A DNA stretch of 64,000 nt, taken from NCBI GenBank assembly GCA_002104905.1, contig MCFE01000093.1:62001-126000 (forward strand), given 5' to 3'. A program made the translations under genes and the position numbers. A model generated the notes under the pieces. The model had not been told where the DNA came from, did no database searches, and was given only the letters and a program-made list of their open reading frames with translations. Below, in pieces: positions 50,248 through 56,327 of the stretch. This DNA is from Basidiobolus meristosporus CBS 931.73. Its lineage: Eukaryota; Fungi; Basidiobolomycota. Each line of letters starts with the position of its first letter. Positions within the stretch are counted from its first letter, which is position 1.

Positions 50248-50878
50248 GCTAACTCTGCTCAAAGCGGTTGGATGTAGAAGAATTTAGGAATGAACTATGG
50301 ATAGCTATTAGTGACAAATGTACATGCATGTAACAATGTATATGAAAGGAGTTTAACAAAGAGAATATTCAACAGGGAAATGATTAATTTTAAGAGAACA
50401 GCGGTCACAAGGAGTGGATGAACAGGAAAGAGGAAGAGCCGAAGAGGACTGTTGCATTGAACCACCGGATGTGGCCGGGGAATTTATACCCAGAGCCTCA
50501 TTACGGAACATTAAAGTAATGGATATTTATTGGCTGCATCCTCGCTAACTTTATTATGTAAGTTGAATCACAAGACAGCAGCAATGTTTTTGAACAAGGC
50601 TCACGTGTGGCTTTCTCTCTAGCAAGGCGGTTTGATAGCCAATTACCAGATTAGTGGAGGCATGACCCACTGCGTAATGATCTGGTTATTACCGGCTTAT
50701 TATGGATTTTTATTATTTCCATGCACTCGACCAACACTGGCAATATATTGTGTGACATAGGTCTTGTTGCTGACTTTCCGTATTCATCCTCCTGGTGTCA
50801 CATTTACTAATGAGCCATCAAAAGAATCGTTCGCTGTATTGCATGCAAGCAAATCGTGAACAAGGAATGGCACAGACA

Positions 50879-50925
50879 CCATATATACGACCATATATAC
50901 GACCATATATACGACCATATATACG
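50879..50925. repeat. 12-bp minisatellite (CCATATATACGA)x4
   Basis: Read directly; last unit lacks its final A. Confidence 0.95.
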
Positions 50926-52040: not shown

Positions 52041-52523
52041 ATGATTGATCCATGAGAAAAATAGATGAGCGCTGACCAACAGCCATAGATTACTTATTCA
52101 CTCAAATAACTCATTTCGATATAAAGATAATCCAAAGCATTGCTGGAGACTTGCGCTTAATCAAGATGTAGCTAACTGTATCTAGAGAATTAGACCAAAT
52201 TACTCACGTGGGTCACGCTTCCAAGTTCCGAAGTTCCGATAGGCCCATGCCGGCAATGAAGCAAGATGAATGGATATATCATCAATTCCCTCAACAGTAT
52301 CGGCTGTCCAGTAGACAGTTAAGGAAACTCCTTGATATTGGTGCATGTTGATCGGTGGAAGCGGAGGTAGTAATAATAAGGGACCTCATCCCTAGATCAA
52401 ATCCGGTTGATAGTCGGTATTAGTTCCTATTGGAGTGTCCCATACGTGATGAGGCAAAGAACCTTAATTCCTAGCTTTGAGTATCTATATAAGAAGGGCA
52501 CTGGAGGATATACACCGTACATC

Positions 52524-53084
52524 ATGGTAGCCAGTCAAGTAGAACACGGAGTTGACAACAGCAAGAACACTTCATTGCTGAAGAACCGAGAGTCTTTGGA
52601 CTTGATTAGAGTACTACGGACCGATGCCGAATATAGCGAAGAAGAGCTCGTTCCTGCAGAGGCTCCAGAAACCTTTAGACACACAGATGCCTTGGTTTGG
52701 CATACACTTCGCGGCGAAGGGAAAATCGACTTGGATCCTCTGATATTTCGCTCCACTGACGGTCAAAAGGTAGTCATGATTGTGCACCTCGGGCCCAAAC
52801 TATGTGGCCATAAAGGTATTATTCATGGCGGTATGATTGCTTCATTATTGGATGAAGCCTTGGGTAGAACTATCATTCCGAATCTGCCTGGAAGCATCGG
52901 ATTCACTGCGAATTTCTCCATCAACTACCGACGCCCTACCTTTGCCGATAACTTCGTCGTGGTCAGAACAGAAGTGACCAAGATTGAGGGAAGAAAAGGA
53001 TTCGTTAAGGGCCAGATAGAAGATGTGCAAGGCAACATCTTGGCGGATTCGGAGGCACTGTTCATCGCTCCCAAAACCAGCTAA
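52524..53084 (+). CDS. Hotdog-fold acyl-CoA thioesterase (PaaI/THEM4-like)
   Basis: HLGPKLCGHKGIIHGGMIASLLDEALG, FTANFSINYRRPT motifs; start codon uncertain (open frame from 52407). Confidence 0.85.
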   Translation: MVASQVEHGVDNSKNTSLLKNRESLDLIRVLRTDAEYSEEELVPAEAPETFRHTDALVWHTLRGEGKIDLDPLIFRSTDGQKVVMIVHLGPKLCGHKGIIHGGMIASLLDEALGRTIIPNLPGSIGFTANFSINYRRPTFADNFVVVRTEVTKIEGRKGFVKGQIEDVQGNILADSEALFIAPKTS

Positions 53085-53143
53085 TCTTTTTGTTCATGCC
53101 ATCTAGCATCTCGTGTAAATTTCAACCCTTTGAATAATCTACA

Positions 53144-53175
53144 AATAAATCCCGAATAAATCCCGAATAAATCCC
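53144..53175. repeat. 11-bp tandem repeat (AATAAATCCCG)x3 downstream of thioesterase
   Basis: Read directly; each unit contains AATAAA. Confidence 0.85.
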
Positions 53176-53363
53176 ATTTCTGCAACCTACCTTTATTTGA
53201 CCAATCCAGTGAAATAATTCCCTTTTTTTCAACTAGGGTCCCCTACAATTTAGTGTTTATATAAGAAGTGACAATCCCCTATATTCATACCTTACCTTTT
53301 ATCAGTCATGGGCCGATTCTAATATGTAAGTAACCCATCCTACAGATGCTTATTTTTTTCACA

Positions 53364-53438
53364 ATGATGATTTGTCCAGTCTCGTTCGTATGAACCAATT
53401 CTGTGATTATTACATACAAAACATGCATCACCATCTGA
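53364..53438 (+). ncRNA. snR55: Box C/D snoRNA copy 1 (snR55/U33-like, double guide)
   Basis: C box ATGATGA, D' ATGA, C'-like GTGATT, D box CTGA; guides GTCTCGTTCGT and CATGCATCACCAT complementary to conserved 18S rRNA. Confidence 0.88.
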
Positions 53439-53575
53439 GCCTTCTTACCAGTGACTAGAATATTTTCTTTCAGCACAACCGCTAATTTTCTCTTTTTATT
53501 CTAGTTGGTATCGGCTGCATAGTAACAATGATAAGGTAATTATTTTTTCTTTACTCAAAGTTTTGCAACTTCCAC

Positions 53576-53649
53576 ATGATGATTTGTCCAGTCTCGTTCG
53601 TATGAACCAATTCTGTGATTATTACATACAAACATGCATCACCATCTGA
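53576..53649 (+). ncRNA. snR55: Box C/D snoRNA copy 2
   Basis: Identical to copy 1 except one fewer A in the CAAAAC run. Confidence 0.88.
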
Positions 53650-53811
53650 CATTCCCATTTCCTTCTGGAATAATTGTGTATTAAGACCACTAGCTAATCC
53701 ATCTCTTTAGATTGTAGATCTCAAGTGATATCGTTCGTAACCATCCACGAATCGTATATATGCATATATGGTATGTATTCTTCTCTATCGCAGCAGTGTT
53801 AGTCCAATTAC

Positions 53812-53885
53812 ATGATGATTTGTCCAGTCTCGTTCGTATGAACCAATTCTATGATTATTACATACAAACATGCATCACCATCTGA
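53812..53885 (+). ncRNA. snR55: Box C/D snoRNA copy 3
   Basis: Identical to copy 2 except G>A in the C'-like box (ATGATT). Confidence 0.88.
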
Positions 53886-54188
53886 CACCTTTCACTTGCT
53901 TGCTTTCTGATGACTTCTCCAAGTACAAAACTAATACTTACTTACAGGTTGCCGAACAATGGTGTGATAAAATTTTGTAAATAAACATGTAAATAAGCAA
54001 AACTTGAACTTGATTTAAAATTATTTGTTTGGCAGTGGAATGTTTATTATGATTGGCAGGGGTGATTCAATTGGATGAAACTGACATGCCCGTCGAGTGG
54101 CATTGCAAGTAGTATTTGTTACTGAGTATCTCTGTCCAGTGTCCTGGCACACCTTCCTTGGAGCAACGAACTAGAAGTTTATTACTAC

Positions 54189-55976
54189 ATGGAGTTTACA
54201 GATTTCTTTAAATTGTCAGGATTTTGTAAATATTCTCCGGATGGTGAATTCATTGCTGCTATCTTCGAAAAGCGCTTAGTTATCCGGAGCATTCATACGC
54301 TGAAGATCACCCGTATGCACCATCTGGATAAGCCCATTAATGTGCTTGAGTGGTCCAATGATTCAAGATTGATTATGTGCGCCTCGTATAAACACGGAAC
54401 GGTAGACATCTTTGATGTTGATGATAGAGACTGGCACGGGCAGATCAGCGAGGGTGATGCTGGTTTGACTTCAGCAAGATGGACTTTCGACGGTAGACAT
54501 GTCATGACTGTGAGTGAATTTCAGGTAGGACAAAGAGAAACTTCAGGTAAAAGCCGTAAAGAGCTCATTCGAAACTTTCTTAGATGAGGTTGACCATTTG
54601 GTCATTGACGGGTGACTCACACATGTCCATTCAGTACCCCAAGTTCTCGGATAGAGGTAAACTCGTCCACCAGCTATTCTTCGCGTCTCCTATTAATGTC
54701 GGGCTATTCTTAGGGGTGGCGTTTCAAAAAGATGGCCGCTACGTGGCTATCGTAGAAAAGCGCGATAGCAAAGATATTATCAGCATATACGATTGCAGTT
54801 CTTGGGCAGTTTGTAAGGTTGGATTAGGATGCCACTTTGACTCTAGATTCAATTGATCTCACCGTTTCCAAAAGCGCATTCAGCCAGAAACGATCGACCT
54901 GGAGAATCTCGAGTGGTCGCCCAACGGCCATTACTTGGCTGTCTGGGACACGCCTTTGAATGTTGGTAATTTCAGCTCCAATCCTTCCGATCGTTACTAG
55001 TCACTAACAGGCCCAACAAAGTACAAATTACTGATCTACACTGCCGACGGAGTGCTGCAGCGATCGTACTCAGCTTATGACCATGCCTTGGGCATAAAAT
55101 CTGTTCAATGGTCGCCCTCGAGCCAGTTTCTAGCCATCGGAAGCTATGACCAGCAGGTAAGTGTTTACGACAAGAACTCCATTTAACGAGAGGCTAACGA
55201 GACAGGGCTCAGGTGCGCTTTTTGAATCACTATACGTGGAGTCCACTGATAGAATTTACATGCGATGACCTACCGAACGATCCCTCAATGGTAAAGTTTA
55301 CCCTGGTAAGCACGCCCAACTTATGCCTAACGGTGACTAATCCTCCGTAGCCTATCTATTGCCAAAACTTTGTGGAGGAATCCAAAGGAAACGTTACAAT
55401 TCATTGTAAGTAAATGAATCAAGCATGTTCCGCCCGACACCCCGGCTAACCCTCAGTATAGACGCTCCTGTTTACCCTCCAGCAATGATTCCCGCTGTCA
55501 AGCCAGAGGCCGGAAAACCATCACCTAAATTGGGGGTTGGCATGATCAAATTCAATCCTCATGGCCGTTTGGTAGCCGTCATCAATGGTAGCCATCAATG
55601 CGCTCAATCATGAGATCTCTGTTCTTACAACCAACTTTACCATTTAGAATGTATTCCTACTTGCTTATGGCTGATGGACATCCCCAACGTACGCCAGATT
55701 TGCGCCATCCAGCAGGCATACCCCATACGAGCCGTTCAGTGGAATCCCATCAATCCGGAGCAGGTGGCTTTCGTTTGTGGTGGAAATCACATCTATTTGT
55801 GGACCGAAAAAACTGGCTGTGAATCTTTCGAAGTCACCGCTGATAACTTTGAGGCTGTTGGCTTAGAATGGAGCCCAGATGGACACTCTTTGGTCATTAA
55901 AGGCAAGGAGCTCTTTTGTGTTGCATTTCCTGTTCACAAAACCAGGGCCAATCCTTCAACGAATAATGGCTTGTAG
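54189..55976 (+). CDS. WRAP73: WD40 protein WRAP73/WDR8 homolog, multi-exon
   Basis: [31 protein letters not shown]...[47 protein letters not shown] match the WDR8 family. Confidence 0.9.
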
Positions 55977-56327
55977 ATTACTGTATGTATGATTGGTATT
56001 TTGTACACGCAGTTAGTTTGTGTGTACGCCTAAATATTTACATCAACCTGCTCACTTAGATCTTAGTCTATGACCAAAACTTTTAGCAGTAGATTCTTGA
56101 AATAGTTTCCACCAAAGTTTTTCCACAATTGGTATATGATTTCCTGCATCTTCAGTTGGTATTTTGATCAATCAATTCCATCAACAATAGACAATTAAAT
56201 GACGACTGAATCGGCGTGCACATTCACCCAAATCGACCATGCAAAAAAATCCTTCCATTTCCTAGATAGCCTCTTGGGCCAAACTTGCTTTTCGCAAGCG
56301 TACTATATATTTGTATAAATCTTCCCC

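What the first reader, a model, noticed from the sequence alone, without database searches (positions are those of the whole stretch)
53270..54000. Non-coding host gene with three iso-architectural introns each carrying the same box C/D snoRNA
Three 74-75 nt C/D RNAs differing at only two positions sit in introns of 179, 175 and 177 nt. Each lies 38-41 nt after the 5' splice site and ends 61-66 nt before the 3' splice site, although the flanking intron sequences and the tiny exons (31 and 60 nt) show no similarity and encode nothing. No terminal stems are evident, implying splicing-dependent processing. This resembles vertebrate UHG/GAS5-type hosts, but as a homo-trimeric dosage amplifier with conserved spacing. 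It is invisible to the ORF track.
Basis: partly seen in the sequence, partly recalled or inferred. Interest (0 to 1): 0.8.

Follow-up and report, generated by a model that had tools for sequence, protein, structure and literature searches.

The report
Triple snR55-type snoRNA host gene
An unannotated, protein-less gene of the fungus Basidiobolus meristosporus carries the same ribosomal-RNA methylation guide in each of its three introns (five in a sister species); it looks real, but genes of this kind are already known from fungi and flies.

Summary
Three copies of a 74-75 nt box C/D snoRNA lie at 53364-53438, 53576-53649 and 53812-53885 (+), in predicted introns of 179, 175 and 177 nt separated by 31- and 60-nt exons.

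The window is Basidiobolus meristosporus CBS 931.73, and nothing is annotated at this spot. The syntenic gap in B. ranarum, between the same thioesterase and WD40 genes, holds five copies, again one per intron.

All eight units have:
- a GTAAGT-type 5' splice site 38-44 nt before box C;
- a CTAAY-type branch site 47-52 nt after box D;
- a YAG 3' splice site.

The chance of this is about 0.002 per unit. The snoRNA is 94-100% identical between the species, while spacers and exons have drifted. A CCAAT / GGGNCCCCTAC / TATA promoter and a poly(A) signal are shared.

The RNA is a double guide. Its D guide is the snR55/U33 guide (18S Um, yeast 1269). Its D' guide fits the SNORD30 site (18S Am, human 1383). 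Rfam hits stay below gathering score.

No RNA run was listed, so splicing and expression are inferred. Earlier notes of this scan report several similar one-snoRNA-repeated hosts elsewhere in this genome. Published precedents are Neurospora UHG-like hosts and Drosophila DmSnR60 x4. Verdict: a new member of a known kind.

The parts
53201..53205 (+). CCAAT box within a block conserved with B. ranarum
   Evidence: Alignment of the promoter regions of the two species.
53236..53246 (+). Conserved upstream element GGGTCCCCTAC (GGGACCCCTAC in B. ranarum)
   Evidence: It occurs once in the 64-kb window, against 0.04 expected.
53258..53265 (+). TATA box TATATAAG, identical in B. ranarum
53290..53325 (+). 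Exon 1. The start is estimated as about 30 nt after the TATA box and is not mapped. It is pyrimidine-rich, and its first ATG opens a 4-codon frame.
   Evidence: The start site is an inference.
53326..53504 (+). Predicted intron 1 (179 nt): GTAAGT, branch CTAAT at 53482-53486, then TAG
53364..53438 (+). snoRNA copy 1 (75 nt, box C to box D)
   Evidence: (snR55, 26.6 bits).
53505..53535 (+). Exon 2 (31 nt), non-coding
53536..53710 (+). Predicted intron 2 (175 nt): GTAATT, branch CTAAT at 53694-53698, then TAG. A second YAG lies at 53717.
53576..53649 (+). snoRNA copy 2 (74 nt), 100% identical to B. ranarum copy 2
   Evidence: (31.9 bits).
53711..53770 (+). Exon 3 (60 nt), non-coding
53771..53947 (+). 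Predicted intron 3 (177 nt): GTATGT, branch CTAAT at 53931-53935, then CAG
53812..53885 (+). snoRNA copy 3 (74 nt)
   Evidence: (34.4 bits).
53948..54005 (+). Last exon. AATAAA lies at 53980-53985. The 3' end is estimated.
   Evidence: B. ranarum has AATAAA-type signals at the matching place.

Best explanation
This is a small RNA polymerase II gene with no protein product. It has its own CCAAT/TATA promoter and poly(A) signal, and it lies between a 4HBT thioesterase gene and a WD40 gene of Basidiobolus meristosporus. Its only useful products are three near-identical box C/D snoRNAs, one in each intron. After splicing and debranching, exonucleases would trim each intron down to the snoRNP. The spliced exons are probably thrown away. 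The snoRNA is a double guide. The element before box D (CAUGCAUCACCAU + CUGA) directs 2'-O-methylation of the 18S uridine that snR55/U33 serve (yeast U1269, human U1326). The element before the degenerate D' box (GUCUCGUUCGU + AUGA) fits the 18S adenosine that SNORD30 serves in humans (A1383). The copies lack terminal stems. Box D sits 47-52 nt before the branch adenosine in all eight units of the two species. Assembly is therefore most likely coupled to splicing, as described for animal intronic C/D snoRNAs. Copy number changes by tandem duplication of a spacer-plus-snoRNA unit: three in B. meristosporus, five in B. ranarum. Shown here: the sequences, the motifs, their spacing, conservation and synteny. 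Inferred: transcription, splicing, RNA stability, the methylations and any dosage effect.
For: Copies and boxes. Rfam: snR55/Z10 at 26.6-35.4 bits for all eight copies, with the 19 nt of guide plus box D identical to the family consensus, and plant U30 at 18-25 bits with the same D' register. Targets: the invariant 11-nt D' guide is the exact complement of ACGAACGAGAC inside the fungal 18S primer FF390. The D guide complements GGTGGTGCATG of the 18S primer NF1 with one G-U pair. N. crassa CD34/snR55/U33 serves 18S Um1265. SNORD30 serves 18S Am1383. Introns: 8 of 8 units have a 5' splice site, a branch site and a YAG at fixed distances. The chance per unit is 0.0019 in shuffles and 0.0025 at random anchors in the window. 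Neighbouring protein-gene introns use the same signals. Synteny and conservation. The snoRNA is 94-100% identical between species whose thioesterases are 78% identical, and the spacers are barely alignable. Invariant columns coincide with box C, guide 1, D', C', guide 2 and box D. Promoter conserved. Poly(A) signal after the last intron in both species. Exons carry stops in most frames and differ in number and length between species.
Against: There is no RNA evidence. No sequencing run was listed, so no junction, no 5' or 3' end and no ~80-nt RNA has been seen. All Rfam scores are below gathering (50 for snR55, 45 for U30). The D' box is AUGA and the C' box UGAUUA, both degenerate. The organism's own 18S rRNA was not available, so pairing was checked against published universal 18S primer sequences. 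The units share ancestry, so the eight splice-signal sets are not fully independent. Some 3' splice sites are ambiguous: a second YAG lies 5-7 nt on.
Confidence: 0.8

Rival explanations
1. The snoRNA introns belong to a protein-coding transcript: a long 5' UTR of the downstream WD40 gene or a 3' UTR extension of the thioesterase gene. There would then be no separate non-coding host. This is what happened with Drosophila dUhg6, later shown to be part of the mfl gene.
For: All three genes are on the + strand and close together: thioesterase stop at 53084, WD40 ATG at 54189. The Drosophila precedent is in PMC1821038. No transcript data are at hand.
Against: A CCAAT/TATA promoter conserved between species sits between the thioesterase and exon 1. 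Three AATAAA signals follow the thioesterase stop. AATAAA follows the last snoRNA intron within about 35-45 nt in both species, while the + strand has about one per 1.3 kb. The stretch between the host gene and the WD40 ATG is poorly conserved.
Confidence: 0.12
2. The array is a polycistronic snoRNA precursor cut by an RNase III-type endonuclease and exonucleases without splicing, as in yeast and plant clusters. The splice-like signals would be incidental.
For: Tandem snoRNA arrays processed without splicing are well known in yeast and plants (established knowledge). No junction reads are available here.
Against: All eight units have all three splice signals at fixed distances, with a chance of about 0.002 per unit. 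No stem-loops typical of RNase III sites recur in the spacers. The signals match those of introns in the neighbouring genes.
Confidence: 0.05
3. The copies are silent relics or pseudogenes of a tandem repeat and make no functional RNA.
For: Rfam scores are below gathering. The internal boxes are degenerate.
Against: The copies are 94-100% identical between two species whose flanking non-coding DNA has diverged beyond easy alignment. Variation is confined to the non-functional linkers.
Confidence: 0.03

Closest known systems
snR55 / U33 (SNORD33) / Z10 / snoR34 / N. crassa CD34 (Rfam RF00472)
   Same: It has the same D-box guide (19 nt including CUGA identical to the Rfam consensus) and hence the same 18S uridine target. 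It is intron-encoded, as in N. crassa.
   Different: It scores 27-35 bits against a gathering score of 50. The 5' half carries a different D' guide. It is present in three (or five) copies in one host gene.
SNORD30 / U30 (plant U30, Rfam RF01283)
   Same: The D' element has the UCUCGUU core in the same register to the D' box, pointing at the adenosine equivalent to human 18S A1383.
   Different: It scores 18-25 bits against a gathering score of 45. Its D guide is that of snR55. The human SNORD30 D guide serves 28S A3804. No U30-type guide is listed among the 55 N. crassa C/D snoRNAs.
UHG-like non-coding snoRNA host genes of Neurospora crassa (PMC2780460); vertebrate UHG/SNHG1 and GAS5
   Same: There is one box C/D snoRNA per intron, the exons are short, non-coding and poorly conserved, and the snoRNA position relative to the 3' splice site is conserved.
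   Different: Those hosts carry different snoRNAs in each intron, whereas this one repeats a single snoRNA. Most N. crassa snoRNAs are single-copy.
Drosophila mfl / 'dUhg6' with four DmSnR60 copies (PMC1821038)
   Same: The same C/D snoRNA is repeated once per intron, each about 70 nt before the 3' splice site. The array arose by tandem duplication.
   Different: The fly array sits in the 3' UTR introns of a protein-coding gene and mixes in other small RNAs. Here the host appears to be a separate gene with its own promoter, in an early-diverging fungus, and carries another snoRNA family.

Membership tests
Box C/D snoRNA | Box C (RUGAUGA) near the 5' end and box D (CUGA) near the 3' end | tested here: met
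   AUGAUGA and CUGA are invariant in all eight copies.
Box C/D snoRNA | Antisense element of at least 10 nt ending next to box D or D', with the target at the fifth paired nucleotide | tested here: met
   An 11-nt D' guide and an 11-13-nt D guide complement published 18S primer sequences. The fifth nucleotide falls on the snR55/U33 uridine and the SNORD30 adenosine (registers read). The organism's own 18S was not available.
Box C/D snoRNA | Short terminal stem joining the 5' and 3' ends | tested here: not met
   There is no complementarity next to the boxes and no recurrent flank pairing in eight intron folds. This is known for a subset of intronic snoRNAs and does not exclude membership.
Box C/D snoRNA | Stable ~70-100 nt RNA bound by fibrillarin, Nop56, Nop58 and Snu13 | not testable with these tools
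   No RNA run was listed.
Rfam RF00472 snR55/Z10 | Score at or above the gathering threshold (50 bits) | tested here: not met
   26.6-35.4 bits, E down to 8e-4 in an 851-base search. Nothing is reported for the whole window at gathering or at E <= 0.05.
Rfam RF00472 snR55/Z10 | Guide for the 18S uridine (yeast U1269) | tested here: met
   The guide plus box D is identical to the consensus over 19 nt.
Rfam RF01283 U30 | Score at or above the gathering threshold (45 bits) | tested here: not met
   18.1-24.8 bits.
Non-coding snoRNA host gene (UHG/GAS5 type) | One snoRNA per intron of a spliced transcript | tested here: inconclusive
   Splice signals are present in 8 of 8 units at fixed distances, but no junction reads are available.
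Non-coding snoRNA host gene (UHG/GAS5 type) | No conserved open reading frame in the exons, and exons less conserved than the intronic snoRNAs | tested here: met
   Tested exon by exon, each exon has stops in one to three of its frames. Exon number and length differ between the species. blastn finds only the snoRNAs and the promoter. The joined exon model was not built.
Non-coding snoRNA host gene (UHG/GAS5 type) | Own Pol II promoter and polyadenylation, with a 5'-terminal oligopyrimidine start in vertebrates | tested here: inconclusive
   The CCAAT, TATA and AATAAA signals are conserved. A pyrimidine-rich stretch lies where the start is expected, but the start is not mapped.

The most novel reading that the evidence does not exclude
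Basidiobolus may amplify particular methylation guides as a general habit, by tandem duplication of intron-plus-mini-exon units. Copy number turns over quickly between sister species: three against five here, with one duplication in B. ranarum still visible. Earlier notes of this scan name several other same-snoRNA hosts in this genome. The RNA itself may be an undescribed dual guide. It joins the snR55/U33 site to the SNORD30 site, a methylation not reported for yeast or Neurospora. That would mean the site is ancestral to fungi and animals and was lost in Dikarya. The fixed 47-52 nt between box D and the branch point would also place position-dependent, splicing-coupled snoRNP assembly before the split of fungi and animals.
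Probability: 0.4. Interest if true: 0.4.

Novelty: new member of a known kind. Interest (0 to 1): 0.3.

Why it matters
It adds an unannotated gene and a well-defined double-guide snoRNA to two Basidiobolus genomes. It predicts two 18S methylations that can be tested directly; one of them (the SNORD30 site) is not known from model fungi. It also gives a clean natural experiment: eight units in two species that keep box D 47-52 nt from the branch point while everything around has drifted. That supports an old origin for position-dependent, splicing-coupled assembly of intronic C/D snoRNPs. For annotation pipelines, it is a reminder that snoRNA hosts in early-diverging fungi are missed by ORF-based calling and by Rfam at gathering thresholds.

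Tried and rejected
- **RNA evidence.** The look-up of sequencing runs listed no run for 52400-56000, so read laying could not be used.
- **Transcript contigs.** Exact-protein look-ups of the neighbouring full-length thioesterase and Smr proteins found nothing on record.
- **Rfam.** At gathering score and at E <= 0.05 over the whole window, there was nothing. Only a narrow search shows the sub-threshold snR55 and U30 hits.
- **Other copies.** A sequence model built from the eight copies found none elsewhere in the window. It found none in the paralogous thioesterase loci L002 and L003, or in the Logan contig L004.
- **Metagenomes.** A scan for the dual-guide pattern gave 0 hits. This says little, because fungal DNA is sparse there.
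- **Terminal or external stems.** None recurs.
- **Literature.** No paper links Basidiobolus and snoRNAs in substance. 'The fungal snoRNAome' does not mention U30, U33 or host genes by those names. The Hirose and Steitz 2001 paper is not held and is cited through PMC1821038.
- **Bacterial-type promoter and terminator scan.** Uninformative.
- **tRNA scan.** Nothing found.
- **Joined exon model.** It was neither built nor searched; exons were read one by one by reference.

Full report
**What is there.**
Reading 53000-54300 and the repeat finder show three direct copies of one element on the + strand. From box C (AUGAUGA) to box D (CUGA) they span 53364-53438 (75 nt), 53576-53649 (74 nt) and 53812-53885 (74 nt). 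A 29-nt 5' piece and a 17-nt 3' piece each occur exactly three times in the 64-kb window, where shuffles give none. The copies differ at two positions in all.
- introns 53326-53504 (179 nt), 53536-53710 (175 nt) and 53771-53947 (177 nt);
- exons of 31 and 60 nt;
- 38-41 nt from the 5' splice site to box C;
- 61-66 nt from box D to the 3' splice site.

**What the RNA is.**
Rfam reports nothing at gathering score for the window, nor at E <= 0.05 over 64 kb. A search of 53200-54050 alone gives snR55/Z10 (RF00472) at 34.4, 31.9 and 26.6 bits against a gathering score of 50. It also gives plant U30 (RF01283) at up to 24.8 bits against a gathering score of 45. So formal family membership by score is not met.

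The alignments explain why. The 3' 19 nt (AACAUGCAUCACCAU plus CUGA) are identical to the snR55 consensus, but the 5' half carries a different element. GUCUCGUUCGU sits directly before AUGA, in the same register in which U30 has UCUCGUU before its D' box.

- **D' guide.** It is the exact complement of ACGAACGAGAC, which lies inside the standard fungal 18S primer FF390.
- **D guide.** It complements GGTGGTGCATG of the 18S primer NF1 with one G-U pair.
- **Targets.** Counting five nucleotides from each box puts the methyl groups on two sites. One is the uridine served by snR55/U33 (N. crassa CD34, 18S Um1265). The other is the adenosine served by SNORD30 in humans (18S Am1383).

The site numbering in yeast and human is from my own knowledge of those rRNAs. 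The organism's own 18S was not at hand. A Tetrahymena family (TtnuCD21) shares only the D guide. The snR55-type guide is therefore old, and the combination with this D' guide may be lineage-specific. N. crassa lists no U30-type guide.

**Organism and relatives.**
The upstream ORF is a 4HBT thioesterase and the downstream gene a WD40 propeller. The thioesterase finds Basidiobolus proteins only. The window's own protein maps to B. meristosporus CBS 931.73, contig MCFE01000093.1. No gene is called there between the thioesterase and the WD40 gene.

The B. ranarum contig L001 has the same order: Smr, thioesterase, a 1.8-kb gap, WD40, NTF2. That gap holds five copies of the snoRNA, spaced 219-246 nt apart. 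Paralogous thioesterase loci, L002 in B. ranarum and L003 in B. meristosporus, have none.

**Are they in introns?**
All eight units have three signals:
- GTAAGT, GTAAAT, GTAATT or GTATGT 38-44 nt before box C;
- a CTAAT, CTAAC, TTAAC or CTGAC branch motif whose adenosine lies 47, 48, 49, 48, 49, 49, 52 and 49 nt after box D;
- a YAG 11-19 nt further on.

In shuffled flanks the two sets of signals co-occur in 0.19% of trials. At random anchors in the window they co-occur in 0.25%. The units share ancestry, so they are not eight independent trials. However, their spacers have diverged to near-random similarity. Introns of the neighbouring WD40 gene use the same signals and are 45-60 nt long. The snoRNA introns look like ordinary introns plus the snoRNA and its spacing.

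Folding the eight introns shows no recurrent pairing between the flanks, and there is no terminal stem. The absence of a stem, together with a fixed distance to the branch point, matches what is described for animal intronic C/D snoRNAs whose assembly is coupled to splicing. That work (Hirose and Steitz 2001) is cited through PMC1821038, and similar distances are noted for N. crassa.

**Is it a gene of its own?**
Upstream of exon 1 the two species share a CCAAT block (53201), GGGNCCCCTAC (53236-53246, unique in the window) and TATATAAG (53258-53265). Conservation stops after the TATA box. Three AATAAA signals follow the thioesterase stop. An AATAAA follows the last snoRNA intron at 53980, and AATAAA-type signals follow at the matching place in B. 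ranarum. The stretch before the WD40 ATG is poorly conserved. This favours a separate transcription unit of about 700 nt. Without RNA data, a UTR-intron arrangement like that of Drosophila mfl cannot be excluded.

**Is it non-coding?**
I examined the exons one by one by reference. Each exon has stops in one to three of its frames. The first ATG opens a four-codon frame. Exon number (4 against 6) and exon lengths differ between the species. blastn between the two loci aligns only the snoRNAs, the promoter, and one weak 75% stretch across a spacer.

**Selection and turnover.**
Window copy 2 is 100% identical to B. ranarum copy 2 over 76 nt, although the flanking thioesterases are 78% identical in protein. 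The invariant columns are box C, the D' guide with AUGA, the C' box (UGAUUA), the D guide and box D. All variation lies in the linkers.

B. ranarum copies 3 and 4 share two private changes, and the spacers before them are alike (z 6.7). So one spacer-plus-snoRNA unit duplicated recently. Copy 5 is 10 nt shorter but keeps both guides. Copy number therefore changes by unit duplication under strong purifying selection on the RNA. That more copies mean more snoRNA is an inference.

**What could not be done.**
No sequencing run was listed. Junctions, transcript ends and the small RNA remain unseen. Exact-protein look-ups for transcript contigs of the neighbours found nothing. A metagenome scan for the dual guide found nothing.

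**Comparison and verdict.**
Non-coding, UHG-like hosts with one C/D snoRNA per intron are published for a fungus (N. crassa, PMC2780460). Repetition of one snoRNA in successive introns, about 70 nt from the 3' splice site, is published for Drosophila DmSnR60 (PMC1821038).

Earlier notes of this scan list further same-snoRNA hosts elsewhere in this genome: snR60 x3, snR56 x4 and others. I could not check those windows, and they count as leads only.

The finding is real and nicely documented by the sister species. It is a new member of a known kind. What may be new are:
- the dual-guide combination;
- the predicted SNORD30-site methylation in a fungus;
- the 3-against-5 copy difference;
- the tight 47-52 nt spacing to the branch point.

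Noticed in passing
window 52527-53081: The public gene model for the thioesterase is 125 aa. The open frame gives 185 aa, which aligns over 99% of its length with the 186-aa B. ranarum protein, so the model looks truncated at its 5' end.
   Followed up: partly
window 53144-53175: An 11-nt tandem repeat, AATAAATCCCG x2.9, puts three AATAAA signals just after the thioesterase stop. It is probably that gene's poly(A) region.
   Followed up: partly
window 50878-50925: A perfect 12-nt tandem repeat, ACCATATATACG x4, lies in an intergenic stretch.
   Followed up: no
window 53715-53723; L001 3140-3148 and 3381-3389: The exons that follow snoRNA introns share a TAGATCNCA motif a few bases after the first YAG. 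It may be an alternative 3' splice site or a remnant of the duplicated unit.
   Followed up: no
L002 6001-6573 and L003 6001-6390: Both Basidiobolus species have a second thioesterase paralogue next to a CLP1/NOL9-type gene. Those loci carry no copy of the snoRNA.
   Followed up: partly
L001 3706-3773: The fifth B. ranarum copy is 64 nt long (10 nt shorter). It has only UUU between box C and the D' guide and a shortened D'-C' loop, yet keeps both guides intact.
   Followed up: partly
window 53236-53246 and L001 2640-2650: GGGNCCCCTAC lies about 12 nt upstream of the TATA box and is conserved between the species. It would be worth checking whether other snoRNA host genes of this genome share it.
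   Followed up: no
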